64,000 nucleotides of DNA, from positions 124,001 through 188,000 of the forward strand of contig CDROCS010001802.1 in assembly GCA_977020255.1 (NCBI GenBank). The letters are read 5' to 3'. Positions 690 to 52,320 of the stretch are shown here, piece after piece. The translations under genes were made by a program, and so were the position numbers. Each line of letters opens with the position of its first letter. Position 1 is the stretch's first letter. This DNA is from Obrimoposthia wandeli (taxonomy: Eukaryota). Below the pieces are notes generated by a model. That model was not told the DNA's origin. It ran no database searches and worked only from the letters and a program-made list of their open reading frames with translations.

Positions 690-3314
690 TTATCTTATAA
701 ACCAATTTTGTTTGACAATGGAAACAGAGTCCCAAGCATTAACAACGCCAGCTAAATCTGTTCCATATCCATTTTTCGTTTTCATATCACCAAAGCCATT
801 CCTGTAATTAGCGAAGCCTTGTGGTACGTATGCTGGACCGAAGTGTAAAGTTGAAAACTCTGAACTATCATTACCTAAATAATTAATTCCCATACCTATA
901 TCCCAATTGTTAGAAGCTGTAGCCGAAACGATGTTTCCAGTTCCATCAACAGTTGTTATAGTGTCTGCATACGCATTAGCTAAATACATACCAATACCTG
1001 TATTAACAGTTGTATTAGGAGCTGAAGCATATGACTTAACAGATTGATTATTCTTATTAAGATTTGTACCTTTTATTTTAGATCCTCTACTATAAATCAT
1101 CATGTCATTCCAATCACTATCATTTATGTATGAGCTAATACCTTCGACATCTAGGTTCATAAGTTCACTATTAAAAGGATTGAAAGCTTTAGCTACTACA
1201 TTTGTCATAACAGAACTAGCATCTATAGCTGTAACAATTAATGTCCAACCACCGCCATCTGTTGTCATATCACAATAAGCCTGTTTAGCGGTTGCAGAAG
1301 GATATATATTATATGAACCATCTCCAGAGCTTCCTTGTGAGTTAAGTATTTGTTTACAAGATTTAGCTAGAAAAGAACCAGAATTTATCTTCGCTTCATT
1401 TTCAATTATCGTTTTATTTTCAACTAAAGTGTTATCTATTGTTTCAGAACCGTCAGCCCACATATTATATACAGTTTTAGTTCTGTCTTGATTCTGAGAA
1501 CAATTAGCATTCTGTGTAAATGATTTGTCCTTGTATATTGTTGCAGCGACAGGCGTAAACGTATCACAGGCATAATAAGCGCCATCATCAACCCATTCTG
1601 TGTATTCTATTCTTTGACCACCTGTAGTGAAGTTTTTAGAGCCGATAGCGCTCTGTGTTTCTGATTCATTTAATGTTTGAATTTCTGTGTTTGTATTATT
1701 GATAGTCTCAGAATTATCAGCCCATATATCATAAACCGTTTTTGTTCTTTCTTGATTTTGAGAACAATCTCTATTTTGAGTGAAAGACTCGCCTAAATTA
1801 ATAGTTGATACAAGTGGAGTAAAGTCACTACAAGCATAATGAACACCACTATCTAACCAATTAGTATATTCAGTTCTTTGCGTTCCTGTATTAAAGTTTT
1901 TAGTCCCGATAGAGTTTTGGGTTTCAGATTCAGTTAAGGTTTGGACTTCAACATTTGTACTATTAACAGTCTCAGAATTATCAGCCCATATATCATATAT
2001 TGTTTCTGTTCTATTTTGATCTTGTGAGCAATTACGATTTTGGGTAAATGATTCTCCTAAATTAATAGTTGATACAAGTGGCGAGAAACCTTCACAGTCA
2101 TAATGAACACCATTATCTAACCAATTGGTATATTCAGTTCTTGTTGAACCAGTATTGAAGTTTTTAGAACCAACCGCTTGTTGTGTTTCGTTTTCTGTTA
2201 ATGTTTTCATTTCTATATTTGTAGTGTCAATAGTTTCTGAATTATCAGCCCATATATTGTATATTGTTTTGGTTCTTTCTTGATCTTGAGAGCAATCACG
2301 GTTTTGAGTAAATGATTCGCCTAAATTAACTGTAGTAATTAAAGGACCCCAAGCGGCACAAGCGTAATGTATACCATCGTTTAGCCAAGTGCTGTATTCG
2401 GTTCTTTGAGAACCTGTATCAAAGTTTTTAGTTCCAGTATTATTTTGAGTTTCATTTTCTATTAATGTTTTAGTCTCAGTATTTGTTGAATTAACAGTTT
2501 CAGATCCAGCCGCCCATATATCATAAACTGTTTCAATTCGTGTTTGATCTTGAGAACAATCTCTGTTTTGTATAAAAGATTCATTTAGATTTACACTAGA
2601 TACAAGTGGCATAAATGTAGTACAAGAATAATGCACACCATTGTTTATCCAACCAGTATATTCAAATCTTTGAGTTCCCGTTATAAAATCCTTAGTACCA
2701 ACAGATTGTTGATATTCCAATTCATTTAAGATTCTTTCTTCATTATTTGTAGAATAAAGAGTCTCAGAATTGTCAGCCCATATATCATATATCGTTTCAA
2801 TTCTTGTTTGTTTTTGAGAGCAAGATTTATTCTGAGTAAAGTCTTCATTTAGGTTAACATTAGAAGCAAGTGGGTTAAAACTCCCACAATTATAGTGTAT
2901 TCCTTCATCTGTCCACGTAGAATATTGAGTCCTTTGATTTCCTGTATTGTAGTTTTCTTTACCTGTTTCTAAATACGAAATAACAACAGGGATATTTTGA
3001 TTTTCAGTTTTAACGGTTGTTCTTGATGTTCCATTGAATATTTCAGTTGTGGTTACTGTACGTTCTTGTTTCTGTAAACAGTCTTCATTCTGTGTGAATG
3101 CTACTCCTAGAGGGAAATCATATTCATTAAACTCTTTTACACAATTAAATTCACTACCAATATCAACCCAATTTGTCGCAACAGGAATTGAATTTTCAAT
3201 GATATCATAATCATTTTTTTCTTGCGAAATAATACTGATGTAGTCATTGGCCTGTGATGTTCCAAATAATATAGCTATTATTGATGTAGTTAGTAATGTC
3301 TTTTTATAATTCAT
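690..3314 (-). CDS. Secreted modular adhesin-like protein: signal peptide, six 88-aa Cys-pair repeats, fibrinogen-N-like SC...YCDMTTDGGGWTL module, divergent tip
   Basis: Signal peptide MNYKKTLLTTSIIAILFGTSQA; repeats (K/E)N(F/Y)xTGxQRTEYxxW...C...QNRDCSQDQxR...IWADNSET; C-terminal SCKQIL...YCDMTTDGGGWTL. Confidence 0.85.
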   Translation of the reverse strand: MNYKKTLLTTSIIAILFGTSQANDYISIISQEKNDYDIIENSIPVATNWVDIGSEFNCVKEFNEYDFPLGVAFTQNEDCLQKQERTVTTTEIFNGTSRTTVKTENQNIPVVISYLETGKENYNTGNQRTQYSTWTDEGIHYNCGSFNPLASNVNLNEDFTQNKSCSQKQTRIETIYDIWADNSETLYSTNNEERILNELEYQQSVGTKDFITGTQRFEYTGWINNGVHYSCTTFMPLVSSVNLNESFIQNRDCSQDQTRIETVYDIWAAGSETVNSTNTETKTLIENETQNNTGTKNFDTGSQRTEYSTWLNDGIHYACAAWGPLITTVNLGESFTQNRDCSQDQERTKTIYNIWADNSETIDTTNIEMKTLTENETQQAVGSKNFNTGSTRTEYTNWLDNGVHYDCEGFSPLVSTINLGESFTQNRNCSQDQNRTETIYDIWADNSETVNSTNVEVQTLTESETQNSIGTKNFNTGTQRTEYTNWLDSGVHYACSDFTPLVSTINLGESFTQNRDCSQNQERTKTVYDIWADNSETINNTNTEIQTLNESETQSAIGSKNFTTGGQRIEYTEWVDDGAYYACDTFTPVAATIYKDKSFTQNANCSQNQDRTKTVYNMWADGSETIDNTLVENKTIIENEAKINSGSFLAKSCKQILNSQGSSGDGSYNIYPSATAKQAYCDMTTDGGGWTLIVTAIDASSVMTNVVAKAFNPFNSELMNLDVEGISSYINDSDWNDMMIYSRGSKIKGTNLNKNNQSVKSYASAPNTTVNTGIGMYLANAYADTITTVDGTGNIVSATASNNWDIGMGINYLGNDSSEFSTLHFGPAYVPQGFANYRNGFGDMKTKNGYGTDLAGVVNAWDSVSIVKQNWFIR

Positions 3315-3340
3315 AATTATCTCTTTTTATTTATAATAAT

Positions 3341-3368
3341 ATTGTATTTCATTTAATATTATTGTCAA
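3341..3368 (-). promoter_or_regulatory. sigma70-like promoter TTGACA-N16-TACAAT for the 874-aa paralog
   Basis: Reverse complement reads ttgaca ataatattaaatgaaa tacaat; same layout upstream of four other paralogs. Confidence 0.7.
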
Positions 3369-3489
3369 AGAGGCACAGAAAGAACAGTTAAATATTTAAT
3401 CACTTGTTAATTAAGGTAATGAATATTATTATTTTTTATTATTTATTTTTAAGCATAAAAAAGAATGAACAAATCATTCTTTTTTATAT

Positions 3490-5016
3490 TTATCTAAACA
3501 TCATTCTAGTTGTTTTGTAACTATAATTAAGGGTCGTATTATAACGCCAATTTATATTATATTGGACTGAGCCACTAGTATCTCCATCTATACTATCTAA
3601 ATATAACCCATTTAAATTGGATGTAAAACAACTTCCATGCCACCAAGCTCCGACTCCTAAAAGAGACGCACAATTAGAAGGATGTTCATCATTGTCAACA
3701 TCTTGTGTTGTGAACGGTTTACCAGAGTGATACGCCAAGCTATCACCTTGTGTTCCACTATGACCATCTACAGTTAATGTATATTTACTTGCTTCATTAG
3801 AAATGTTGAAAGTTGAATACCTTGCGTTATAAATAACTCCATTGTGATGACCGAGTTCTACATATAATTCTTTATTTCCGATTGTCATTTCTGCAATAGC
3901 TTCATTTCCTAACCAAAAATTATCTCCTGAACCAAAACCATTTTTATATTCAGACCAATTTTGGTTAAAATTGGAATTAGAAAATCGGCTTTGAAAAACA
4001 GTCCACCCTCCACCGTCAGTGGTCATATCACAAGTAGCACTTTTATTTCCAGAAGGTAAGTTTAATGTATAAATGCCAGAACCAGTGCTCCAACCATTAT
4101 CAAGAATAACTTTACAAGAAGTAGCTAATCCAGTACCAACATTATTTTGTGATTGATCATTTACTAATGTTTGAACTTCCACAATTGTTGTATTAACCGT
4201 TTCAGATGTGTCAGCCCATATATCGTATACTGTTTTAGTTCTATCTTGATCTTGAGAACAATCTCTATTTTGTACAAGAGGTTCATTTAATCTTAATGTG
4301 TTTGTAAGAGGAATCCAATCAGTACAGGAATGAATAGCGCCATTATTTAACCATTCAGTATATTCAGTTCTTTGTGAACCAGTAATGAAGTTTTTAGTGC
4401 CAACCGCTTCTTGATATTCTAATTCATTTAGATTTCGTTCTTCATTATTTGTAGAAAAAAGAGTTTCTGAGTTATCAGCCCATATATCATAAACCGTTTC
4501 AGTTCTTGTTTGTTTTTGAGAACAAGATCTATTTTGCGTAAACACTTCATTTAGATTTATAGTATTAATAAGTGGAGAAAAATCGCCACAAGCAAAATGA
4601 GAGCCATCATCTATCCAGTTAGTATATTCTGTACGTTTTACTTCGGTGTTATAATTTTCCAATCCAGTATCAATATATGAAATAATTACAGGTATATTTT
4701 GATAATCAGTTACAATGGTAGTTCTTGGTGTACCATTAAAAATTTCAGTTGTGGTAATTGTTCTTTCTTGTTTTTGTAAGCAGTTTTCATTTTGAGTAAA
4801 TGTTACTCCTAGAGGGAAATCATATTCATTAAACTCTTTTACACAATTAAATTCACTACCAATATCAGCCCAATTTGTCGTAATGGGAAGCGAATTTTCA
4901 ACAACATCGTAAACGTGTTTTTCTTGCGAAATAATACTAATATAGTCATTTGCTTGTGATGTTCCAAATAATATCGCTATTATTGAAGTAGTTAGTAATG
5001 TTTTTTTATAATTCAT
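3490..5016 (-). CDS. Secreted repeat protein with two 88-aa repeats and a complete fibrinogen C-terminal (FReD) domain
   Basis: Start re-set to MNYKK at 5016 by paralog alignment and RBS-like AAAAAGAG. FReD motifs GGGWTVFQSR, W-x-EYKNGFG, FWLGN, FTTQDVDND, GAWW, SNLNGLY. Confidence 0.9.
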   Translation of the reverse strand: MNYKKTLLTTSIIAILFGTSQANDYISIISQEKHVYDVVENSLPITTNWADIGSEFNCVKEFNEYDFPLGVTFTQNENCLQKQERTITTTEIFNGTPRTTIVTDYQNIPVIISYIDTGLENYNTEVKRTEYTNWIDDGSHFACGDFSPLINTINLNEVFTQNRSCSQKQTRTETVYDIWADNSETLFSTNNEERNLNELEYQEAVGTKNFITGSQRTEYTEWLNNGAIHSCTDWIPLTNTLRLNEPLVQNRDCSQDQDRTKTVYDIWADTSETVNTTIVEVQTLVNDQSQNNVGTGLATSCKVILDNGWSTGSGIYTLNLPSGNKSATCDMTTDGGGWTVFQSRFSNSNFNQNWSEYKNGFGSGDNFWLGNEAIAEMTIGNKELYVELGHHNGVIYNARYSTFNISNEASKYTLTVDGHSGTQGDSLAYHSGKPFTTQDVDNDEHPSNCASLLGVGAWWHGSCFTSNLNGLYLDSIDGDTSGSVQYNINWRYNTTLNYSYKTTRMMFR

Positions 5017-5042
5017 AATTATCTCTTTTTGTTTATAATAAT

Positions 5043-5070
5043 ATTGTATTTGATTTAAGAATATTGTCAA
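5043..5070 (-). promoter_or_regulatory. sigma70-like promoter TTGACA-N16-TACAAT
   Basis: ttgaca atattcttaaatcaaa tacaat on the minus strand. Confidence 0.7.
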
Positions 5071-5138
5071 AACACTATATTTTAAGAATAAAAAAGAGCG
5101 ATAGTTAATCACTCTTTATATTATTGATGAATTAATCT

Positions 5139-6398
5139 TTATCTAAACATCATTTTTACACTTTTATAACTATAAAGATGTCCATGTCCATGATACCAAT
5201 TAAGTCCGTTTTCGATACCAGAATAATTGCCATCTTTGTATATTCCGTTTAAATTAGAAAAATAACATCTATTATGCCACCAAGCCCCATTATAATTAAC
5301 AGCACAGTTAACAGATTCATGAAGATCATTATCAACATCTTTTGTCGTGAAAGCCATTCCTGAATGGTATGTTAAAGAATCACCATTGTTTCCACTAAAC
5401 CCAGAAACAGTTAACATATACTGACTTAATTCATTTCCGACATTAAAAGTATCATATTTGGCGTAATAGACAGTCCCATCGTGATGTCTAAAGTCTATAT
5501 ATAATTCTTTATTACCTACTGTCATTTCTGCAATTAAATCATTGCCAAGCCAAAAATTTCCTTCTGAGCCGAATCCGTTTTTGTATTCGATCCAGTTTTT
5601 ATAAAAATCTGTATCAGATACTCTACTTTGGAAAACAGTCCAACCACCACCATCAGTAGTCATATCACAAGTAACATCTTTGTTCCCAGAAGGAAGGTCT
5701 AATGTATAAACTCCATCTCCAGTGCTTAATCCATCATCCAATATATTTTTACAAGACAATCCTAATATAGAGGGTTTAGTTCCAATTGCAATTTGTGATT
5801 CGATTTCTATTAAAGTTTTAGTTTCTGTTTCGGTGCTGCTAATGGTTTCAGAATTGTCTGCCCATATATTGTATATATTTTTAATTCTATCTTGATTTTG
5901 AGAACAATTACGATTTTGGGTAAATGACTCTCCTAAATTAACGGTTGAAATTAATGGAGCAAAATTATTGCACGAATAATGAACTCCATTATCAATCCAA
6001 GCAGTATATTCAGTTCTTTCGACTCCAGTATTGAAATTTTCTTTGCCGACATCAATATAAGAGACAACGATATCCTTATTTTGATAATCAGTTACAACGG
6101 TAGTTCGAGGTGTACCATTAAAAACTTCAGTTGTTGTAATTGTCCTTTCTTGCTTTTGTAAACAATTTTCATTTTGAGTAAATTCTTCTCCTAAAGGATA
6201 GTTATATTCACTAAATTCTTTAATACAATTAAACTCGCTACCAACATCGATCCAATTTGTCGCAACGGGAATCGAATTTTCAACAACATCGTAAACGTGT
6301 TTTTCTTGAGAAATAATACTTATATAATCATTTGCTTGTGAATAACCAAATAATATGGCTATTATTGATGTGGTTAGTAATTTTTTTTTATAATTCAT
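5139..6398 (-). CDS. Secreted repeat protein with one 88-aa repeat and a complete FReD domain
   Basis: Same N-terminus; GGGWTVFQSR, WIEYKNGFG, FWLGN, FTTKDVDND, GAWWHNRCYFSNLNGIY. Confidence 0.9.
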   Translation of the reverse strand: MNYKKKLLTTSIIAILFGYSQANDYISIISQEKHVYDVVENSIPVATNWIDVGSEFNCIKEFSEYNYPLGEEFTQNENCLQKQERTITTTEVFNGTPRTTVVTDYQNKDIVVSYIDVGKENFNTGVERTEYTAWIDNGVHYSCNNFAPLISTVNLGESFTQNRNCSQNQDRIKNIYNIWADNSETISSTETETKTLIEIESQIAIGTKPSILGLSCKNILDDGLSTGDGVYTLDLPSGNKDVTCDMTTDGGGWTVFQSRVSDTDFYKNWIEYKNGFGSEGNFWLGNDLIAEMTVGNKELYIDFRHHDGTVYYAKYDTFNVGNELSQYMLTVSGFSGNNGDSLTYHSGMAFTTKDVDNDLHESVNCAVNYNGAWWHNRCYFSNLNGIYKDGNYSGIENGLNWYHGHGHLYSYKSVKMMFR

Positions 6399-6424
6399 AA
6401 TTGTCTCTTTTTATCTATAACATT

Positions 6425-6452
6425 ATTGTATTTTATTTAGTGATATTGTCAA
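6425..6452 (-). promoter_or_regulatory. sigma70-like promoter TTGACA-N16-TACAAT
   Basis: ttgaca atatcactaaataaaa tacaat on the minus strand. Confidence 0.7.
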
Positions 6453-6544
6453 AATAGTATTTTTATAAATATTTTTATAAATATTTTTTCAAATAAAAAA
6501 GAGCAATATATTATCACTCTTTTTATTATTTATAATTTTATTTT

Positions 6545-8575
6545 TTATCTAAACATATAGAATAATTTTGTACCATTGACCGTTGACTTATTTCTGTGCC
6601 AGCCGTTAAGGTGTGCATAAGCTCCAACTCCACGAGGGTCTATTTTAATAGACGTTATATATGCATTTTCAGAATATTGATGATATTCAGGTTTATTTAG
6701 AAGTCCACAGTTGTCAGTGCCTTCAGTTCCGCTACAATAAACTCTTGGGAAGTTCCCATTAAAATGTATACTTACAACAGTGTTATTCCAACCATTCATC
6801 ATTTCAACTTTTGTTTCGTTGATTAAGTCTATTGATTTATAAGTAATGCTTGAAGGATTTATGCTATCATCAGCTTGCATATTCATAATCCAATCTGTAT
6901 CTAATCCATTTTCTGACGATATGTTTTTTATATATGCCATATTAATCAAATCTTCCGCTGATAATATTTCGATGTCATATGAGCCATCATTAATATTAAC
7001 GAGATTATAAGTAGTATCAGTACCAAAAGTAGTCCAACCACCGCCATCAATCGTCATATTGCAAGATACATTATATGATTTGGTATTATTAATGATTTCA
7101 TAAACACCGTCACCATTACTTCCTGAATGATTTAGTATATCCAAACAAGATTCAGCCAAATAAGTACCAGTCGCAATTTGAGATTCATTTTCACTTACTA
7201 TTTGTGATTCTGAACTTGTTGAATTAATAGTTTCAGTTCCATCAGCCCATAAGTCAACAATAGTCATTGTTCTATTTTGGTTTTGTGAACAACTTCTATT
7301 TTGTGTAAAATCAGTTTCATTATATATTGTAGGAATAAGTGGAGCGAAAGTACCACAATCATAATGAGTCCCGTTATCTAACCACTCTGTATAATCCGTT
7401 CTTTGTTCGCCAGTTATAAAGTTCTTTGTCCCTGTTGAAATTTGTTCTTCATTCTCAATAAGTGTTTGCGTTTCTACATCGGTAGAAGATAGTGTTTCAG
7501 AATTATCAGCCCATATATCATATATGTTTTTAGTCCTATCTTGGTCTTGTGAGCAATCTCTATTTTGAGTAAATGAACTACCTAAATTAACAGTTGTCGT
7601 AAGTGGAATAAATGTATTACAACCGTAATGAGAGCCATTATCTAACCACTCTGTATACTCAGTTCTTTGAGTTCCAGTATTAAAGTTTTTAGTACCGATT
7701 GAATCTATTTCTTCATTTTCTATTAAAGTTTGTAATTCTATGTTTGTATTATTAAGCGTTTCAGAACCATCAGCCCATATATCATAAACTGTTTCTGTTC
7801 TGTTTTGATCCTGAGAACAATCTCTGTTCTGTTTGAATGTATCACCTAAATTAATAGTAGATTTTTCAGGTAAGAAGTTGCTACAAGAATATAATCCCCC
7901 ATTATTAATCCAGTTAGTATATTCAGTTCTTTGTACGCCAGTGTTGAAATTTAAAGTACCAATTGCAGGTTGTGACTCATTTTCATTTAATGTTCTAACT
8001 TCCGTATCTGTTGAATAGAATGTTTCAGAATTATCAGCCCATATATCATAAACAGTCTCAGTTCTTTTTTGATCCTGAGAACAATTCCTATTTTGTGTAA
8101 ATGATTCATCTAGATTGATTGTTGAAACAAGTGGGGAAAAATCACCACAAGCGTAGTGAGAACCATTATCTATCCAATTAGTATATTCTGTACGTTTTAC
8201 TTCAGTGTTATAATTTTCTAAACCAGTGTCTAAATATGAAACAACAACAGGTATGTTTTGATGATCAGTTACAACGGTAGTTCTTGGTATACCATTAAAA
8301 ACCTCAGTTGTTGTAACTGTTCTTTCTTGTTTTTGTAAACAGTTTTCATTTTGCATAAATGATTCGTTTAAAGGGTAATCATACGCATTAAACTCTTTAA
8401 CACAATTAAATTCATTTCCAATATCGATCCAGTTTGTAGCCACAGGAAGAGAATTTTCAACAACATCATAAACATGTTTTTCTTGCGAAATTATACTTAT
8501 ATAGTCATTAGCTTGCGCTGTTCCAAATAATATTGTTATTATTGATGTGGTTAGTAATGTTTTTTTATAATTCAT
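6545..8575 (-). CDS. Secreted repeat protein with four 88-aa repeats, fibrinogen-N-like module and a unique tip
   Basis: MNYKK start at 8575 (ORF track starts at 8581); SCLDIL...SCNMTIDGGGWT followed by sequence unrelated to the other tips. Confidence 0.85.
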   Translation of the reverse strand: MNYKKTLLTTSIITILFGTAQANDYISIISQEKHVYDVVENSLPVATNWIDIGNEFNCVKEFNAYDYPLNESFMQNENCLQKQERTVTTTEVFNGIPRTTVVTDHQNIPVVVSYLDTGLENYNTEVKRTEYTNWIDNGSHYACGDFSPLVSTINLDESFTQNRNCSQDQKRTETVYDIWADNSETFYSTDTEVRTLNENESQPAIGTLNFNTGVQRTEYTNWINNGGLYSCSNFLPEKSTINLGDTFKQNRDCSQDQNRTETVYDIWADGSETLNNTNIELQTLIENEEIDSIGTKNFNTGTQRTEYTEWLDNGSHYGCNTFIPLTTTVNLGSSFTQNRDCSQDQDRTKNIYDIWADNSETLSSTDVETQTLIENEEQISTGTKNFITGEQRTDYTEWLDNGTHYDCGTFAPLIPTIYNETDFTQNRSCSQNQNRTMTIVDLWADGTETINSTSSESQIVSENESQIATGTYLAESCLDILNHSGSNGDGVYEIINNTKSYNVSCNMTIDGGGWTTFGTDTTYNLVNINDGSYDIEILSAEDLINMAYIKNISSENGLDTDWIMNMQADDSINPSSITYKSIDLINETKVEMMNGWNNTVVSIHFNGNFPRVYCSGTEGTDNCGLLNKPEYHQYSENAYITSIKIDPRGVGAYAHLNGWHRNKSTVNGTKLFYMFR

Positions 8576-8600
8576 AATCATCTCTTTTGTTTATAATAAT

Positions 8601-8628
8601 ATTATATTTCATATAAAATAATTGTCAA
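8601..8628 (-). promoter_or_regulatory. sigma70-like promoter TTGACA-N16-TATAAT
   Basis: ttgaca attattttatatgaaa tataat on the minus strand. Confidence 0.7.
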
Positions 8629-8666
8629 AAATCAAATTATTTTAATCACTAAATAAATTATTATCA

Positions 8667-9896
8667 TTATCTTACCCAAAAGCTAAACTGGTTTGCTGTA
8701 CATTGTCTGCTACCATTGTGTGTATATGGATTTGTTACAATAGGACAAGTATCTGCTTCATACATCTTAAATTGCCCTAAACTCCACCACCAACTATTAG
8801 TTTGACTTCCATATTTTGCATGTCCATAACTATGCTGTACTAATCCAAAACCATTTAGGCTTTGTAATCCTGGTTCGGTTGTACTTAATATCTGAAAACC
8901 AGCAGGGACTGTAACTGAAGTATCCCCATTATTCGCAATAACTGAAGCATCTTGCTTAAAAATCGTATGGTTATATGTTGTAGTGGTTCTGTAATTTTTA
9001 TACATATATTGATTGTTGGTTTTTATATCATCGACTTTACCTAATATAGAATAAAGGTTACTGTTAGAATCTGGGTTAGATGCATTAAAATTTAGATTAT
9101 TAGATTCTGTAAACCAATGGTTTAATTTCTGACTCATTAATAATGTCCAACCACCACCATCTGTAATCATGTCGCAATACACATTTATATTATCACTTCC
9201 TGTTTGATTAATAGTGTAGTTACCACTCAATGTTTCACCACTGTTCAATAATGCTAAACATGAAGTCAAAACAAGAGTTCCTGTCGCATTTCGAGTTTCA
9301 TTTTCGTTTAAAACTGTTGTTTCTAAGTCACTAGAAAATAAGGTTTCTGTATTATTAGCCCATATATCATAAACAGTTTTTGTTCGTTCTTGATTTTGAG
9401 AACAATCTCTATTTTGTTCAAATGATTCGCCCAGATTAACAGTTGATACAAGTGGTGCAAATGTACCACAAGAATAATGAATACCTTCATTTAACCAAGT
9501 CGAATATTCAGTTCTTTGAGTGCCAGTCTTATAATTATCCAGACCAGTTTCTAAATATGAAATAACAACAGGAACATTTTGATTTTCAACTTTTACAGTT
9601 GTTCTTGGTGTACCATTAAAAACCTCAGTTGTTGTAACGGTTCTTTCTTGTTTCTGCAAACAATTTTCATTTTGAGTAAAAGACTGACCTAAAGGAAAAT
9701 CATAGGCACTAAACTCTTCAACACAGCTAAACTCTGTGCCTATATCAAGCCACTCTGTTGCTACAGGCAATGAGTTTTCAACGACATCATAGATATGTTT
9801 TTCTTGCGTAATGATACTAATATAATCATTTGCTTGAGTTGTTCCAAACAATATTGCTATGATTGATGTTGTTATTAACGTTTTTTTATAATTCAT
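8667..9896 (-). CDS. Secreted repeat protein with one 88-aa repeat, fibrinogen-N-like module and a unique tip
   Basis: Same signal peptide and N-domain; SCLALL...VYCDMITDGGGWTL...NLYSILGKVDDIK. Confidence 0.85.
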   Translation of the reverse strand: MNYKKTLITTSIIAILFGTTQANDYISIITQEKHIYDVVENSLPVATEWLDIGTEFSCVEEFSAYDFPLGQSFTQNENCLQKQERTVTTTEVFNGTPRTTVKVENQNVPVVISYLETGLDNYKTGTQRTEYSTWLNEGIHYSCGTFAPLVSTVNLGESFEQNRDCSQNQERTKTVYDIWANNTETLFSSDLETTVLNENETRNATGTLVLTSCLALLNSGETLSGNYTINQTGSDNINVYCDMITDGGGWTLLMSQKLNHWFTESNNLNFNASNPDSNSNLYSILGKVDDIKTNNQYMYKNYRTTTTYNHTIFKQDASVIANNGDTSVTVPAGFQILSTTEPGLQSLNGFGLVQHSYGHAKYGSQTNSWWWSLGQFKMYEADTCPIVTNPYTHNGSRQCTANQFSFWVR

Positions 9897-19112: not shown

Positions 19113-20075
19113 TTAATAAAGTTTTTTGTTATTTTTAGCTGAAATATTCCATTTATTTATATTTCTATCAAAAAGAGAATATTTAAACATTCTATCAAAT
19201 TGAGTGCCGCTTGATACATTCCACAAACTTATATCTTTATTAAAAATAGATCTTTCAAACATTCCTCCAAAATTAAGACCTTTTGATACATTCCATTCGG
19301 AAACATCCTGATTGAATCTGCTTTTTCTGAACATATAACTAAAATTAATACCTTTCGATACGTCCCATTTACTTATATCTTTATCAAAAATAGTATTATC
19401 GAACATCCCCATAAAATTAATTCCACTGGAAACATTCCATTGTCCAATATTTTTATTAAAATAAGAGGAACTAAACATTAAACTAAATTGTTCACCTTTT
19501 GATACATTCCAATGCCCAAGATCTTGATTAAACTTTGATTCGCTAAACATATAACTAAAATTAGTAACATTTAAAACTTTCCAATTATTTATTTCTTGAT
19601 TAAAATCTGATTTAGCAAACATACTAGAGAGATTACTGGCAGAATATGGATTCCATTTACTTATATCTTGATTGAATTTTGTTAATTCAAACATTCGAGA
19701 AAAGTTTTCTCCTTTTGAAACATTCCAATCACCAATATATTGATTAAACTTACTATTGGCAAACATTGATTCAAAATTAATTCCTTTTGATACATCCCAT
19801 TTATTAATAGTATAATTAAATGAAGATTTACTAAACATATAAGAAAAATTAGTGCCGTTAGAGACATCCCAATTACTGATATCCTGCTTGAAAGACTTAT
19901 TGTTATAGAAGAGTTTGCTAAAATCAGTAATACAGCTAGTGTTTACTTTTGTGACATTTTTTCCGCTATGGACCATCTTTTTAAGCTGTTCTTTCGGATA
20001 GCATTTTTTAGTGTCGGCTTGTGCATTTGAAAATACAGAAGCAAGTATTATAGCTAATATTATTTTTTTCATCAA
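19113..20075 (-). CDS. BspA/DUF285-type leucine-rich repeat surface protein
   Basis: Signal peptide plus about 11 tandem 22-aa repeats FNQDISxWDVSxGxNFSxMF. Confidence 0.9.
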   Translation of the reverse strand: MMKKIILAIILASVFSNAQADTKKCYPKEQLKKMVHSGKNVTKVNTSCITDFSKLFYNNKSFKQDISNWDVSNGTNFSYMFSKSSFNYTINKWDVSKGINFESMFANSKFNQYIGDWNVSKGENFSRMFELTKFNQDISKWNPYSASNLSSMFAKSDFNQEINNWKVLNVTNFSYMFSESKFNQDLGHWNVSKGEQFSLMFSSSYFNKNIGQWNVSSGINFMGMFDNTIFDKDISKWDVSKGINFSYMFRKSRFNQDVSEWNVSKGLNFGGMFERSIFNKDISLWNVSSGTQFDRMFKYSLFDRNINKWNISAKNNKKLY

Positions 20076-40090: not shown

Positions 40091-40687
40091 ATGTTTTTAG
40101 ATAAAATTAAATTTGTTGAAGATTTTCGTTGTTACAAAAAAGATGAAGAAGTCGTATTCAATGATAATTTGACAATTATTTCAGGAGATAATGGGTCTGG
40201 AAAAAGTACCTTGCTGTCTTGTATTCGTAGTATGTATGAAGTTAAATGGACATTATCAGATGAACCTTCTGCAAAAAATAAAATTGAGATAGAGGGCGAC
40301 AAAGAAGGTTCTGTATTTTACTTGGATTTAAGTTCAGACCTTTATAAAAACTCTTCTGAATTAGATTTTGATAATATGTCACTTTATATGCAGTGTCAGC
40401 AGTCATCTAGTGGAGAGGGTGTTATTTTTCAATTAGTTAATTTACTAAAAGAAAAAATAAGTACAGCTAAAATGATTATTATTGATGAACCTGAACGTGG
40501 TTTAAGTATTAAAAATCAAATATTGATTTCAAGAGTGATCAATAAGTTTTCAACAGAAAATCCTGAAGTCCAATTCATTGTGACAACACATTCAGAAGCT
40601 ATTTTGTTAACAAAAAAAGAAATATGGTCAGCTAGTCATAAAAGTTATATTTCAAGCGATGCTTATATGTTATGGTTATATAAATAA
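40091..40687 (+). CDS. ABC/AAA_21-type ATPase
   Basis: Walker A GDNGSGKST, signature-like SSSGEG, Walker B IIIDEPE, H-loop TTHS. Confidence 0.9.
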   Translation: MFLDKIKFVEDFRCYKKDEEVVFNDNLTIISGDNGSGKSTLLSCIRSMYEVKWTLSDEPSAKNKIEIEGDKEGSVFYLDLSSDLYKNSSELDFDNMSLYMQCQQSSSGEGVIFQLVNLLKEKISTAKMIIIDEPERGLSIKNQILISRVINKFSTENPEVQFIVTTHSEAILLTKKEIWSASHKSYISSDAYMLWLYK

Positions 40688-40698
40688 AAGGAAAAAAA

Positions 40699-41034
40699 AT
40701 GAAAAATATATTTACAATTACGACTTTTCAAAAAGAAAAAAAAGTGGAAGGTTCTGATTTAACGCATAGAGACTCTAGAACAGTTGGTTATATGTATGAT
40801 AAACAAGAAGCAATTAGATTGGTTGAGTCGAATGCTTGCGATTTAAATGAAGCAGGTTATTATCCTTATGCCTTAGTGGAAGAAGTCCCAGAAGGAATCT
40901 ATGCAATGTCAAGGGATTTGCCATTTAAAGACCGTGTAACTTGGTTTAAATGGAATGAAAAAACAGAATCTTATGAGATCACGGATAAATGTCCAAAAGG
41001 ATATGAAAGATTGGTTAACTTATCATTGGGATAG
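40699..41034 (+). CDS. Conserved hypothetical protein (phage type)
   Basis: 111-aa ORF with AGGA RBS; RTVGY...NACDLNEAGYY. Confidence 0.7.
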   Translation: MKNIFTITTFQKEKKVEGSDLTHRDSRTVGYMYDKQEAIRLVESNACDLNEAGYYPYALVEEVPEGIYAMSRDLPFKDRVTWFKWNEKTESYEITDKCPKGYERLVNLSLG

Positions 41035-43853: not shown

Positions 43854-45155
43854 GTGGGGAAAATTATGTTTTCGAGAAAAAAGACAACGCATCTTGTGAT
43901 TGAAAATTTTGATAATAAAATGACAATTTTTAATGAAGAGATAAAATCTATTTTTATTGATCAAGAGAAGGACAATAAAGAAGATGTCTATGACAACGGT
44001 ATTAACTTAAAATTAAAGAAATATTTTAAAACATCGAGAAAGGGGGATAAATTAGTATTATCTTTTTTAAAAAAGAAGTTTACAGATGATTTTAGAAACA
44101 AAGAAATGGTTGATGTCATATTCAACTTATATGGTTATGAAAAAATAACTTTTATAGATTCAGAGATAAAAATAAAAGATACTTGTACGTCTAAAAACAG
44201 AACTAATATTTGTTTAAAGAATACAACGATGTCAATATCTTCATTAAGAAGAAAAGCGCTATCTGTCTCATTAGAGAAATCCAATATAAGATTTCTTAGT
44301 GATACCGCACTAAATTTTTTACATTTAACATCTTCATTTTCTAAAGTAAAAACCTACGGAAAATTTTTAGTAGAAGCTCTATCGCTAAATGAAGTTAATA
44401 ATAGCAATATAGCAATTAATGAAGGTTATATTAATCACCTATATGGAACAATGGAAGATTCTGTTTTTGGAACTTTAAATACAAGCTCTTTGGGTATGGT
44501 ATCGGTTTCTATTAAGGGTAAAAGTGAAGTATCAATGAATGTTTTAAACAACATAAGATATTCATTAGAATCAGATTCTTATTTAGAAATAAAGGGAAAT
44601 GTACCAGTTCATAATGAAGGTGATGAAAAAAATGAAATCAATGTAGAAAGAAAATGGGAAGATACTTCTTTATTTGATAAAAAATTACTATCATCAGTAG
44701 CATTTTCGCAAGAGTTACGTTCTTGTATTAAAGATTCTTTTTTTTATAGCGAAATTTCATACCCTTCCAATTTAGATATCATTGTTGAAGATAATATTAC
44801 AAATAAAATAAATGAAAATATATTGTCTGAAAATGAGGCTAAAGCGAACGTAGACTCAATCTTAGCGATTGTTACTAACGAATTGAATAAGAGCAAGGCT
44901 AATCAAGATAAGCTTATCTATGAAGTTCGAGAGCCTACCATAGATGAAAGAGAAGATGTAAAAAATATAAAGTATATCTTGTCAAATAAAAACCCTGCTC
45001 ATTATATAACAAATAACAATAAAGAAGAATTGATAAATGTATTAAAAATATTAATTGTCGAGAAAATAAAACTAAATGAATTACAACAATTAAACCTCGA
45101 TAAATTATGCTTCCTATTTGATATAAAAAAACGAAAAAACGAAGTCGAATATTAG
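43854..45155 (+). CDS. Paralog family A member 4 (most divergent)
   Basis: MFSRKKTTHLVI start; C-terminus ILSNKNPAHYITNNNK...NLDKLCFLFDIK. Confidence 0.7.
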   Translation: MGKIMFSRKKTTHLVIENFDNKMTIFNEEIKSIFIDQEKDNKEDVYDNGINLKLKKYFKTSRKGDKLVLSFLKKKFTDDFRNKEMVDVIFNLYGYEKITFIDSEIKIKDTCTSKNRTNICLKNTTMSISSLRRKALSVSLEKSNIRFLSDTALNFLHLTSSFSKVKTYGKFLVEALSLNEVNNSNIAINEGYINHLYGTMEDSVFGTLNTSSLGMVSVSIKGKSEVSMNVLNNIRYSLESDSYLEIKGNVPVHNEGDEKNEINVERKWEDTSLFDKKLLSSVAFSQELRSCIKDSFFYSEISYPSNLDIIVEDNITNKINENILSENEAKANVDSILAIVTNELNKSKANQDKLIYEVREPTIDEREDVKNIKYILSNKNPAHYITNNNKEELINVLKILIVEKIKLNELQQLNLDKLCFLFDIKKRKNEVEY

Positions 45156-45186
45156 TAAATAAATACTGTAAAATAGCGATAAACAG

Positions 45187-45215
45187 TTGCTTTAGTTGCG
45201 TTTTTTTGTTATAAT
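45187..45215 (+). promoter_or_regulatory. sigma70-like promoter TTGCTT-N17-TATAAT for sRNA candidate 1
   Basis: Exact 17-nt spacer; predicted TSS coincides with the start of the closing stem. Confidence 0.7.
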
Positions 45216-45220
45216 ATCTT

Positions 45221-45302
45221 TGTTAGCTCGCTAGGTGAAACGTGTTTTTTTTACTAATGATGAATAGTCTTTAAGACTTCGTAGTAACTTAACGAGCTAA
45301 TG
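45221..45302 (+). ncRNA. Candidate small structured RNA, copy 1
   Basis: Closing stem ttagctcg/cgagctaa; conserved GGTGAAACGTGTTTTTT and TAGTAACTT; internal hairpin ttacta...agtct-tta-agact...tagtaa. Confidence 0.65.
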
Positions 45303-45407
45303 TTTTCCTATCAATATCTCCAAATAAAGGGATTTAATCAAAATCCCATCTATGAAAAAATCCAAAAAAAATATATCAAATAAAGCATTCTTTTATGCAA
45401 AAAAAGA

Positions 45408-45436
45408 TTGTATTAAAACTCAAAACATGTTATAAT
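45408..45436 (+). promoter_or_regulatory. sigma70-like promoter TTGTAT-N17-TATAAT for sRNA candidate 2
   Basis: Exact 17-nt spacer; TSS predicted at the stem start. Confidence 0.7.
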
Positions 45437-45441
45437 TACAA

Positions 45442-45531
45442 TGTTGGTCGTTGGGTGAAACGTGTTTTTTGAATAGTTCTTGAATTATTATAGAGCTGAA
45501 AAACTATAGCCTAGTAACTTAACGACCAACA
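45442..45531 (+). ncRNA. Candidate small structured RNA, copy 2
   Basis: Perfect 11-bp closing stem tgttggtcgtt/aacgaccaaca; the same two conserved blocks; a different internal hairpin. Confidence 0.65.
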
Positions 45532-45554
45532 ATCCAATAAAAATAGATGCTATA

Positions 45555-45666
45555 TGTATACAAAACGAAAGAAAGTATACATATAATATTTACGTGTATA
45601 CAAAACGAAAGAAAGTATACATATAATATTTACGTGTATACAAAACGAAAGAAAGTATACATATAA
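45555..45666. repeat. 40-bp perfect tandem repeat x2.8 with an internal palindrome
   Basis: Unit tgtatacaaaacgaaagaaagtatacatataatatttacg starting at 45555, 45595 and 45635. Confidence 0.95.
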
Positions 45667-45764
45667 CAATTCCAACAAAAAAGAAACATTTTCAGAGAAA
45701 TATCCAATATCCAATATTAAAAACAAAAAAAAGATAACTTATTCGTTATCTTATTTATTTTTGA

Positions 45765-46067
45765 TCATGAGAACATATTAATAAGCCATAAGGGTGATCC
45801 GTAAATAAGGGAATAAAAGCCAACAATTCCAGTGACAGGATAAAATATAGGTATAAGTCCGATAAAGATCATCAATCCACTATCAAATTCAGTGAAACTC
45901 ATATAAATAAAGTTAAAACTACCTACAACCCCAGCAAAATATAAAGCAAATTCAAATATTAAAAACAAAATAAAAAAACCATTCCATCTAGACATAACAA
46001 TAACAATCCTTAATTGATAATAAAATACTTCGAAACAATCTAAATTGTTTATACAGAAATAATACAT
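45765..46067 (-). CDS. Small membrane protein
   Basis: Hydrophobic; probable start at the internal MSRWNG. Confidence 0.6.
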   Translation of the reverse strand: MYYFCINNLDCFEVFYYQLRIVIVMSRWNGFFILFLIFEFALYFAGVVGSFNFIYMSFTEFDSGLMIFIGLIPIFYPVTGIVGFYSLIYGSPLWLINMFS

Positions 46068-51979: not shown

Positions 51980-52320
51980 CTGATTGGTTGATGCGGAACT
52001 CAACTTTTCTGGACAAGGGTTCAAATCCCTTCAGCTCCACCAAAAGTACATTTAGTAAATCGAGTTACGATTACTAGTATGTTAGCGGTTAAGTGTATTT
52101 TTGATGGGGCTGTTCTGGAATCGACAGGATTGAGCGGTGATGTGGACAATTCAAGAGGAAATAACTCTTGTAAATAAAGTTAAAAAACGAATAATATCTA
52201 ACGATAATTCATTTGAAGGTGCTGCCTTAGCTGCGTAAGCCCTTCCGAGGTGTAAGAAGCCTTGTTACCAAATATCATAGGTTTTGCGAAAGGTTAGCTT
52301 GCTAATTAATCAATGAACCG
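51980..52320 (+). ncRNA. ssrA: Circularly permuted two-piece tmRNA: acceptor piece ~51980-52042, intervening segment 52043-52105, coding piece 52106-~52320; tag (A)SNDNSFEGAALAA at 52197-52238
   Basis: T-arm plus 3' end GGACAAGGGTTCAAATCCCTTCAGCTCCACCA lies upstream of the 5' end GGGGCTGTTCTGGAATCGAC. Acceptor stem GGGGCTG/CAGCTCC has G3:U70. The tag ORF ends LAA-stop. The intervening segment has complementary ends. Confidence 0.93.

What the first reader, a model, noticed from the sequence alone, without database searches (positions are those of the whole stretch)
45187..45531. Twin promoter-driven small RNAs with covarying closing stems and invariant single-stranded motifs
Seen in sequence: two units about 220 bp apart each have a TTGnnn-N17-TATAAT promoter whose TSS falls at the first base of a terminal stem. 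The stems differ in sequence but both pair (ttagctcg/cgagctaa; tgttggtcgtt/aacgaccaaca), which is compensatory change. Inside, RGGTGAAACGTGTTTTTT and TAGTAACTT are identical and flank an unrelated, variable hairpin. No downstream gene is positioned for cis-regulation. I do not recognise the family. Inference: a trans-acting RNA class with a constant protein-binding scaffold and a variable module, for example guide, decoy or antitoxin-like. The inverted arms around a hairpin also loosely recall a miniature retron msr-msd.
Basis: partly seen in the sequence, partly recalled or inferred. Interest (0 to 1): 0.78.

Follow-up and report, generated by a model that had tools for sequence, protein, structure and literature searches.

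The report
Paired genes for an unknown small RNA
Two neighbouring genes in a poorly known, AT-rich bacterium most likely each make a short rod-shaped RNA of a family not yet catalogued, built around a classic protein-docking kink, but what the RNA does is unknown.

Summary
Two homologous units (45222-45301 and 45443-45530, + strand) each start 7 nt after a TTG-N17-TGnTATAAT promoter. That promoter type occurs 7 times in the window against 0.23 expected, and 5 of the 7 precede ORFs.

Each unit folds into a rod. It has a blunt 14-15-bp terminal helix, a GAA/AGUA internal loop (the canonical sarcin-ricin motif sequence), a 3-4-bp helix, a U-rich helix and an apical extension.

No Rfam family matches. 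Phage, plasmid, viral, genome and metagenome scans gave only chance hits.

A covariance model found one orthologue at the syntenic place in the closest relative. It is a 60-nt version with the same promoter geometry and a textbook terminator, but without the "variable hairpin". The RNA core is the best-conserved DNA of the region. Unit 1 has no change in a strain about 5% diverged, whose flanking DNA differs by about 6-9%.

The covariation claim is overstated: one compensatory pair and one two-sided deletion, which is not significant.

No reverse transcriptase, Ro or Cas gene is in the window, and no target complementarity was found. So the retron and guide ideas are unsupported.

Best reading: a new small structured, probably protein-binding, RNA gene family (three copies in two genomes) of unknown function. 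The scan has not noted this RNA before on other DNA.

The parts
45187..45215 (+). Promoter of unit 1: -35 TTGCTT (45187-45192), 17-nt spacer, extended -10 TGTTATAAT (45207-45215).
   Evidence: Read. The pattern TTG-N17-TGnTATAAT is enriched 7 against 0.23 expected, mostly in front of ORFs. The hexamers are unchanged in the diverged strain; its changes at 45198 and 45199 fall in the spacer.
45222..45301 (+). Unit 1 RNA (80 nt). P1 is 45222-45236 with 45287-45301. GAA is 45237-45239 and AGUA is 45283-45286. P1b is ACG 45240-45242 with CGU 45280-45282. The U-rich helix P2 is 45244-45248 with 45273-45277. The apical extension is 45249-45272.
   Evidence: Fold. Model score 94.5 bits. No substitutions in a strain about 5% diverged, while flanking DNA carries 6-9%.
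45329..45347 (.). Hairpin GGGATTT-AATCA-AAATCCC between the units. It has no U-run on the + strand but is terminator-like on the - strand.
   Evidence: Its role is unclear; it may be a decayed terminator of the duplicated cassette (inference).
45408..45436 (+). Promoter of unit 2: -35 TTGTAT (45408-45413), 17-nt spacer, extended -10 TGTTATAAT (45428-45436).
   Evidence: The region upstream of unit 2 aligns with the region upstream of the L016 orthologue (75% over 98 nt).
45443..45530 (+). Unit 2 RNA (88 nt). P1 is 45443-45456 with 45517-45530. GAA is 45457-45459 and AGUA is 45513-45516. ACG is 45460-45462. The U-rich helix is GUUUUU with AAAAAC. The apical hairpin is AGUUCU with AGAGCU.
   Evidence: Fold. 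Model score 106 bits. No terminator follows directly, so read-through into the 40-nt repeats is expected (inference).
45555..45674 (+). Three tandem 40-nt copies, each with a GTATAC-N13-GTATAC hairpin. They lie between unit 2 and the terminator. They are absent from the orthologous locus, so they are not part of the conserved unit.
   Evidence: They are also present in the diverged strain (records 18 and 19).
45731..45762 (.). Bidirectional intrinsic terminator (AAGATAAC-TTATTC-GTTATCTT with A-rich and T-rich flanks). It is shared by the + strand RNA transcripts and the convergent small membrane protein gene.
   Evidence: (I6). The equivalent terminator lies directly after the RNA in L016.
45765..45995 (-). 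Convergent gene for a 76-aa small membrane protein. It is the only neighbour kept next to the RNA in both genomes.
   Evidence: 38% identity to L016 14456-14692..

Best explanation
These are two tandem paralogous genes for a small, stable, structured non-coding RNA. They belong to one family with a single-copy gene at the syntenic place in a related uncultured AT-rich bacterium.

Each gene has its own strong extended -10 promoter. Transcription is predicted to start at the G that forms the first pair of a blunt 14-15-bp terminal helix.

The conserved core is that helix, then a GAA/AGUA internal loop (the sarcin-ricin, bulged-G motif), a 3-4-bp helix and a short U-rich helix. The apical part is a dispensable expansion segment of 0 to about 45 nt.

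The 3' end is made by an intrinsic terminator, directly after the RNA in the relative and after read-through in the window. It is probably then trimmed back to the terminal helix.

Inferred mode of action: the rod with its sarcin-ricin platform is bound by a protein partner, as a scaffold or sequestering RNA. It probably does not act as a base-pairing guide.

Shown: the sequence anatomy, the promoter type, orthology, sequence constraint and the absence from catalogues. Inferred: transcription, RNA ends, protein binding and function.
For: - Promoter type is genuine in this genome: 7 against 0.23 expected, 5 of 7 in front of ORFs.
- Promoter geometry is identical (-10, 6 nt, then G as first base of P1) in all three copies.
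- The orthologue is L016 14734-14793(-), 52.7 bits, E about 3e-9. It lies in a collinear gene block and is followed after 15 nt by an 11-bp hairpin and a U-run.
- The RNA halves are the best DNA matches between the two regions (87-95%). The adjacent coding gene reaches only 71% and neighbouring proteins 38-69%.
- Unit 1 has 0 changes in 80 nt in a diverged strain. The coding DNA upstream carries 36 changes per about 560 nt, and the flanking intergenic DNA has 6 changes in 66 nt and 4 in 53 nt.
- RNAalifold independently predicts P1, the GAA/AGUA loop and P1b.
- G-U pairs (columns 13/78 in all three copies, 1/90, 12/79) and folding energies favour the promoter strand.
- AGUA/GAA is the canonical sarcin-ricin sequence (PMC1865062).
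- No Rfam family matches.
Against: - No expression data exist: no RNA run holds the DNA. Transcription and RNA ends are predictions.
- Only three copies in two genomes are known, so covariation is not significant.
- Conservation of sequence would also fit a DNA-level site.
- No candidate protein partner is linked. The only conserved neighbour is a small membrane protein, and its relative in another contig has no room for such an RNA.
- The sarcin-ricin assignment rests on sequence consensus alone.
- Unit 2 has a C-C mismatch in P1b and no terminator of its own.
Confidence: 0.55

Rival explanations
1. It is a base-pairing regulatory small RNA. The U-rich segment or apical loops act as seed against mRNAs elsewhere in the genome, and the terminal helix only stabilises the molecule.
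For: The promoter, short RNA and intrinsic terminator layout is typical of such RNAs. The L016 transcript has an A-rich single-stranded spacer and a U-tail. The paralogues differ mainly in the apical part.
Against: The most conserved parts are paired or in the structured internal loop, not in loops. The invariant U-run is predicted to be paired. No complementarity beyond 11-13 nt was found in 64 kb of 28% GC DNA, which is chance level. The apical part is missing in the orthologue.
Confidence: 0.15
2. It is an antisense or type I antitoxin-like regulator of the convergent small membrane protein gene. The two transcripts overlap at the shared bidirectional terminator.
For: The membrane protein gene is the only neighbour kept next to the RNA in both genomes, always convergent and sharing the terminator. 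In L016 the RNA sits between two paralogues of that gene.
Against: The overlap is limited to the terminator hairpin. The conserved RNA core has no complementarity to the mRNA above shuffled controls. The protein is 76-78 aa, and 18 related cluster representatives turned up in the 1.84-billion-protein representative library. One relative's locus has only 29 nt before the next gene. No toxin family matched.
Confidence: 0.08
3. It is a DNA-level element rather than an RNA, such as a recombination or binding site, or a hairpin used in single-stranded DNA, duplicated locally.
For: It consists of inverted arms with conserved inner boxes. Sequence conservation is stronger than structural covariation. 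It lies in a variable region between conserved genes, with a tandem palindromic repeat beside it.
Against: A genuine promoter sits at a fixed distance in all three copies, and a terminator follows in L016. G-U pairs become A-C mismatches on the other strand, and folding energies are better on the + strand. There are no further copies in 64 kb or in 228 kb of relatives. No recombinase or transposase is adjacent. The GTT...AAC arm order is the reverse of integron attC sites (read from sequence).
Confidence: 0.07
4. It is a template or guide RNA of a protein machine: a retron msr-msd, a CRISPR-like or TnpB-like guide, or a type III antitoxin array together with the 40-nt repeats.
For: Terminal inverted arms resemble retron a1/a2. 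Three 40-nt hairpin repeats follow unit 2 without a terminator between them. TnpB genes exist 12 kb away in the window and 6 kb away in L016.
Against: No reverse transcriptase, Cas or toxin-like gene is nearby, and no RVT or TROVE hit was found in about 60 ORFs. The repeats and the variable hairpin are absent in the orthologue. The TnpB guide RNA is encoded at the transposon's own end, not here (established knowledge).
Confidence: 0.04

Closest known systems
Sarcin-ricin (bulged-G, eukaryal loop E) motif as found in 23S/28S and 5S rRNA
   Same: The internal loop has exactly AGUA on one strand and GAA on the other. The 3' A of AGUA and the 5' G of GAA abut the same helix, and Watson-Crick pairs flank both sides. 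It is invariant in all three copies (PMC1865062).
   Different: Here it sits in a 60-90-nt free-standing RNA, 15 bp from a blunt terminus. There is no GAGA tetraloop as in the ribosomal sarcin-ricin loop. The three-dimensional fold is not tested.
Bacterial Y RNAs (YrlA/YrlB) and other stable rod-like ribonucleoprotein RNAs such as 4.5S SRP RNA
   Same: All are small RNAs with the 5' and 3' ends paired in a long terminal helix that carries a conserved internal loop serving as the protein site, with a variable distal module. YrlA and YrlB also occur as adjacent pairs (established knowledge).
   Different: Rfam Y RNA, YrlA and SRP models gave no match. No Ro (TROVE) or Ffh gene is nearby. There is no GNRA tetraloop or SRP symmetric loop, and no tRNA-like module.
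Retron msr-msd non-coding RNA
   Same: Inverted terminal arms enclose a structured region, driven by the RNA's own promoter.
   Different: No reverse transcriptase gene follows or lies anywhere in the window. The RNA is much shorter (a 60-nt orthologue). A terminator follows directly in L016.
Type I toxin-antitoxin pairs with convergent overlapping 3' ends (for example bsrG/SR4, txpA/RatA)
   Same: A small RNA gene is convergent with a small hydrophobic protein gene and they share a bidirectional terminator.
   Different: The overlap is only the terminator. The conserved RNA core is not antisense to the mRNA. The protein is larger and not a known toxin family.

Membership tests
Any Rfam 15 family | Covariance-model score at or above the family's gathering threshold | tested here: not met
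   Only tmRNA_permuted at 51982 passed in the window. In the permissive scans the best match overlapping a unit was rteR at 18.1 bits against a threshold of 72. The best on the orthologue was 23 bits against 50-60, driven by the terminator.
Sarcin-ricin / bulged-G motif | AGUA opposite GAA in an internal loop, flanked by canonical pairs, in the right strand polarity | tested here: met
   Invariant in units 1 and 2 and in L016. RNAalifold leaves exactly GAA and AGUA unpaired between P1 and P1b. The consensus is from PMC1865062. This is sequence-level only.
Sarcin-ricin / bulged-G motif | Characteristic S-turn three-dimensional geometry with a G-U-A base triple | not testable with these tools
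   Needs structure probing, crystallography or NMR.
Retron msr-msd | Adjacent retron-type reverse transcriptase gene | tested here: not met
   No RVT domain in about 60 ORFs of the window. Neighbours in L016 have none on record.
Retron msr-msd | Terminal inverted repeats a1/a2 flanking the RNA | tested here: met
   14-15-bp terminal helix. This feature is not specific to retrons.
Bacterial Y RNA (YrlA/YrlB) | Linked rsr (Ro, TROVE domain) gene and a Ro-binding helix matching the Rfam model | tested here: not met
   No TROVE hit and no Rfam match.
SRP (4.5S) RNA | Domain IV with a GNRA tetraloop and conserved symmetric and asymmetric loops | tested here: not met
   No Rfam SRP match. The apical loop of the 60-nt orthologue is U/A-rich, not GNRA.
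Type III antitoxin RNA (ToxI-like) | Tandem repeats of about 36 nt directly upstream of an endoribonuclease toxin gene | tested here: not met
   The units are not tandem short repeats. The 3 x 40-nt array is followed by a terminator and a convergent gene, with no toxin ORF.
Type I antitoxin RNA | Extended antisense complementarity to the mRNA of a small hydrophobic toxin | tested here: inconclusive
   The transcripts would overlap at the shared terminator only. The best duplexes are no better than shuffles. Toxicity of the 76-aa protein is untested.
Integron attC site | RYYYAAC at the 5' end and GTTRRRY at the 3' end of an imperfect hairpin, next to gene cassettes | tested here: not met
   The arm order here is GTT...AAC, the reverse. 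A promoter and terminator flank it, and there is no cassette context.

The most novel reading that the evidence does not exclude
The three copies are the first members of a new family of stable ribonucleoprotein RNAs in an uncultured, ORFan-rich, AT-rich bacterial lineage. In this reading a free-standing 60-nt rod uses a sarcin-ricin module as the docking platform for an unknown protein. The duplicated genes in this genome carry different apical expansion segments that give the particle different partners or specificities.
Probability: 0.3. Interest if true: 0.55.

Novelty: new member of a known kind. Interest (0 to 1): 0.36.

Why it matters
If it is expressed, this would be a compact, easily synthesised bacterial RNA built around a sarcin-ricin module outside the ribosome. 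It comes from a lineage where most genes and several RNAs are unrecognisable. Finding its protein partner could reveal a housekeeping or host-interaction particle specific to that lineage. With three copies, no expression data and no linked protein, it is for now a well-founded candidate, not a discovery with a mechanism.

Tried and rejected
- **Rfam.** Gathering and permissive scans of the window and of the orthologue gave nothing.
- **Exact two-motif pattern scans.** The 185,579-species genome collection gave 3 hits and the JGI metagenomes gave 12. All were chance matches: coding DNA, no closing stems, no U-run. IMG/VR gave 0, 6 and 1 hits in three scans, none confirmed by the model.
- **blastn against phage and plasmid collections.** No match.
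- **Protein routes.**
  - The 433-aa upstream ORF has no relatives, only a marginal PHROG hit, and is not kept in the relative.
  - A word search with the small membrane protein was blank. The profile search gave 18 weak representatives. One of their loci leaves no room for the RNA and the other is GC-rich without it.
- **Syntenic contigs of more distant relatives** (53-61% identity of the CoaB-fusion protein; L017-L028, L037, L038). There were no model hits. A structure-descriptor scan of 228 kb, including the window and L016, found only the three known units plus chance-level hits.
- **L024 candidate.** The 13.7-bit hit upstream of ssb was inspected and rejected because it lacks GAA/AGUA.
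- **Expression.** No RNA run holds the DNA. Only contigs could be laid on it, so no starts or ends are visible.
- **Target search and antisense test.** Both were at chance level.
- **Other folds considered and rejected by reading the sequence.** These were the hammerhead core (UGAUGA occurs only in unit 1), the k-turn (no GA after a 3-nt bulge), the SRP domain IV and attC.
- **Contig of the closest relative, P0001.** No DNA was available because the sample file is too large.

Full report
**Observation**

Reading 44800-45900 shows two units on the + strand. Unit 1 is 45222-45301 and unit 2 is 45443-45530.
- They share TCGYTRGGTGAAACGTGTTTTTT near the 5' end and TAGTAACTTAACGA near the 3' end (families D5 and D9). 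These motif pairs occur nowhere else in the 64-kb window.
- Each unit is preceded by TTGnnn, a 17-nt spacer ending in TG-n, and a perfect TATAAT (45187-45215 and 45408-45436).
- In both units a G lies 7 nt after the -10 hexamer and is the first base of the closing helix.

The tool's promoter scan missed these sites because the -35 hexamers match only 3 of 6 positions. However, TTG-N17-TGnTATAAT occurs 7 times in the window against 0.23 expected from shuffles. Five of the seven lie directly upstream of ORF starts (11123, 13242, 19070, 31955, 63195), and the remaining two are these units. So this is the organism's real strong-promoter type, not an accident of AT-richness.

Both units fold better than shuffles on the + strand: -23.6 kcal/mol (z = -3.3) and -28.8 kcal/mol (z = -5.0). 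The - strand gives -18.7 and -18.6 kcal/mol.

**Anatomy**

Aligning the copies and running RNAalifold gives the same picture as manual pairing:
- a blunt terminal helix P1 of 15 pairs (14 in unit 2);
- an internal loop made of GAA on the 5' strand and AGUA on the 3' strand;
- a short helix P1b (ACG/CGU);
- the invariant UGUUUUUU, whose GUUUU pairs with AAGAC, AAAAC or AAAC to form a U-rich helix P2;
- an apical part.

AGUA/GAA, with the 3' A of AGUA and the 5' G of GAA next to the same helix, is the canonical sequence of the sarcin-ricin (bulged-G) motif (PMC1865062). That motif is a recurrent RNA module that usually serves as a docking surface. This assignment is by sequence only.

**The covariation claim**

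In fact they are homologous. Over the three known copies:
- 11 of 15 P1 pairs never vary;
- one pair shows a two-sided change (C-G to G-C, a U-U mismatch in the third copy);
- one pair is deleted on both sides in unit 2;
- the rest are one-sided changes (A-U to G-U, G-U to G-C, U-A to a C-A mismatch).

351 of 500 shuffles reach the same score. The changes are compatible with an RNA helix but prove nothing.

Strand evidence is a little better. The G-U pairs (columns 13/78 in all copies, 1/90, 12/79) would be A-C mismatches on the other strand.

**Known families and public collections**

No Rfam 15 family matches at the gathering threshold or in permissive mode. The same holds for the orthologue.

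blastn against phage and plasmid collections found nothing.

Exact scans for the two motifs at the right spacing gave:
- 3 hits in 185,579 species genomes;
- 12 hits in JGI metagenomes;
- 0 hits in IMG/VR.

All hits were inspected and are chance matches in coding or unrelated DNA. Two looser viral scans were also negative after model scoring.

**An orthologue**

The CoaB/aldolase/methyltransferase fusion protein 2 kb away has relatives of 53-70% identity. I fetched their contigs.

A covariance model built from the two units (R1) found one clear hit: L016 14734-14793, minus strand of the locus, 52.7 bits, E about 3e-9. L016 comes from the second-closest relative (69% identity). The contig of the closest (P0001, 70%) had no DNA available.

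The two regions are collinear gene for gene. The shared genes are the SLT_4 transglycosylase, a short AAA_15/21 ATPase, two small ORFs, the small membrane protein, the aminotransferase, the fusion protein and the GGDEF protein.

In L016 the element reads:
- TTGATT, 17 nt, TGATATAAT, 6 nt;
- then GUUAGUUCGUUAGGU-GAA-CCG-UGUUUUUUAAACAACUG-CGU-AGUA-ACUUAACGAUCUAAU (60 nt);
- then 15 A-rich nt and an 11-bp hairpin followed by U's.

That hairpin is a bidirectional terminator shared with the convergent 78-aa membrane protein gene. So the same promoter geometry, the same core and a textbook terminator delimit a transcription unit of about 100 nt with no ORF.

The orthologue has no variable hairpin at all. 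The apical part is therefore an expansion segment, not an obligatory module. The two window units also share UGAAUAGU inside their apical parts, so these are diverged rather than unrelated.

**Constraint**

Comparing 2.8 kb of the window with 5.5 kb of L016 by blastn, the best DNA matches are the RNA's 5' half with its promoter (87%) and its 3' half (95%). The adjacent membrane protein gene reaches only 71%, and most of the rest does not align.

Contigs of a run from another study hold a strain about 5% diverged (52 differences in about 1000 nt). Of these:
- 36 lie in 44643-45199;
- 6 lie in the 66-nt intergenic stretch before the unit (these overlap the 36);
- 4 lie in the 53 nt after the unit;
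- none lies in 45200-45301, which contains unit 1.

With about 8% divergence in the flanks, the chance of no change in 80 nt is about 0.001 (my arithmetic). Eleven further differences beyond 45354 were not listed, so unit 2 cannot be judged.

**Limits of the family**

- Contigs of relatives at 61% identity or below, and a contig of a near relative of L016's organism (L038, fusion protein in the same 90% cluster) with a different arrangement after the aminotransferase, have no copy in the stretch recovered.
- A descriptor scan (stem, GAA, inner helix, AGUA, stem) of 228 kb returned only the three units and two hits at background level.
- The window holds no third copy with filters off.

The family stands at three copies in two genomes, plus one strain variant.

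**Context and partners**

About 60 ORFs of the window were scanned against Pfam. No reverse transcriptase, Ro/TROVE, Cas or RNA-binding family appeared, and most ORFs match nothing.

The 433-aa ORF upstream of unit 1 has no relatives and is absent from the orthologous locus.

The only neighbour kept in both genomes is the convergent 76-78-aa membrane protein (38% identity).
- In L016 a second paralogue lies on the other side of the RNA.
- The family has 18 weak representatives in 1.84 billion clusters.
- One such locus leaves 29 nt before the next gene.
- No known toxin or defence family matches.
- Duplex predictions between the RNAs and the membrane protein mRNAs are no better than shuffles.
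- The longest exact complementarities of the units elsewhere in the window are 11 nt, and the longest same-strand match is 13 nt. Both are at chance level in 28% GC DNA.

**The organism**

The gene content points to a Gram-negative-type bacterium. The related contigs carry OmpA, apolipoprotein N-acyltransferase, HU, ClpA/ClpS and HPF, and the window and L016 carry a GGDEF protein. It has 28% GC and very many ORFans.

One related contig (L017) was deposited as part of a "viral metagenome". Its content looks bacterial.

**How it most likely works**

Shown:
- two (in the relative, one) promoter-driven, ORF-free units with a conserved rod-like fold and a sarcin-ricin-type loop;
- sequence constraint stronger than on the flanking genes.

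Inferred:
- transcription starts at the first base of P1;
- termination occurs at the downstream hairpins. For unit 1 this is perhaps the weak UGUUUU after P1. For unit 2 it is the terminator at 45731-45762, after reading through the three 40-nt repeats;
- the 3' tail is trimmed to the blunt helix, as in other stable RNAs;
- the GAA/AGUA platform, at a fixed distance from the terminus, is bound by a protein.

The constraint lies on the paired and structured core, the apical part is dispensable, and no target complementarity exists. I therefore favour a protein-binding scaffold or sequestering RNA (about 0.4) over a base-pairing regulator (0.15). The remaining rivals are a regulator of the membrane protein gene (0.08), a DNA-level site (0.07) and a retron, guide or type III-like RNA (0.04). 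That it is a real RNA gene I put at about 0.8.

**Novelty and score**

This is a credible new small RNA family in a poorly sampled lineage, not a new kind of system. Interest is moderate (0.36): real, uncatalogued and carrying a neat structural motif, but lacking expression data, a partner, a mechanism or breadth.

The large representative search was used only after the word search left the small protein open.

Noticed in passing
window 45555-45674: Three perfect or near-perfect tandem 40-nt copies, each holding a GTATAC-N13-GTATAC hairpin. They lie between unit 2 and the terminator, so they are probably co-transcribed with unit 2. They are absent at the orthologous locus in L016 but present in the 5%-diverged strain. 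Assemblies break here.
   Followed up: partly
window 11123, 13242, 19070, 31955, 45187, 45408, 63195: TTG-N17-TGnTATAAT occurs 7 times against 0.23 expected, and 5 of these sit right before ORF starts. It is a useful promoter signature for annotating this ORFan-rich genome and its other candidate RNAs.
   Followed up: partly
window 45765-45995 (-); L016 14456-14692 and 15015-15266: A small (76-83 aa) two- to three-helix membrane protein family with a conserved IPxFYPxT...G.Y...P.W motif. It has no Pfam family and about 18 distant cluster representatives, including GC-rich ones. It is duplicated around the RNA gene in L016.
   Followed up: partly
L017 (JAPJDW010000157.1, 184 kb): This contig was deposited in a 'viral metagenome' of a sea-surface slick study. 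It encodes OmpA, HU, UvdE, ClpS/ClpA, a ribosome hibernation factor and an M23 peptidase. It looks like a bacterial chromosome piece of the same AT-rich lineage, probably misfiled as viral.
   Followed up: no
window 40091-41034; L016 18924-19882: A very short (198 aa) AAA_15/AAA_21 ATPase resembling the heads of AriA, GajA and PtuA, plus a 111-aa ORF. The pair is conserved in both genomes about 4 kb from the RNA. It may be a minimal defence-like pair.
   Followed up: no
L024 5800-5960 (-): A TTGATT-17-TATACT promoter is followed by a structured leader of about 110 nt (GAACUU...AAGUUC stem, duplicated GAUGAAC) in front of ssb in a more distant relative. It is unrelated to the family studied here.
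   Followed up: no
window 690-9896 and 19113-20075: An array of large surface-type proteins with fibrinogen C-terminal domains, and a DUF285 repeat protein. These suggest a host-associated lifestyle.
   Followed up: no
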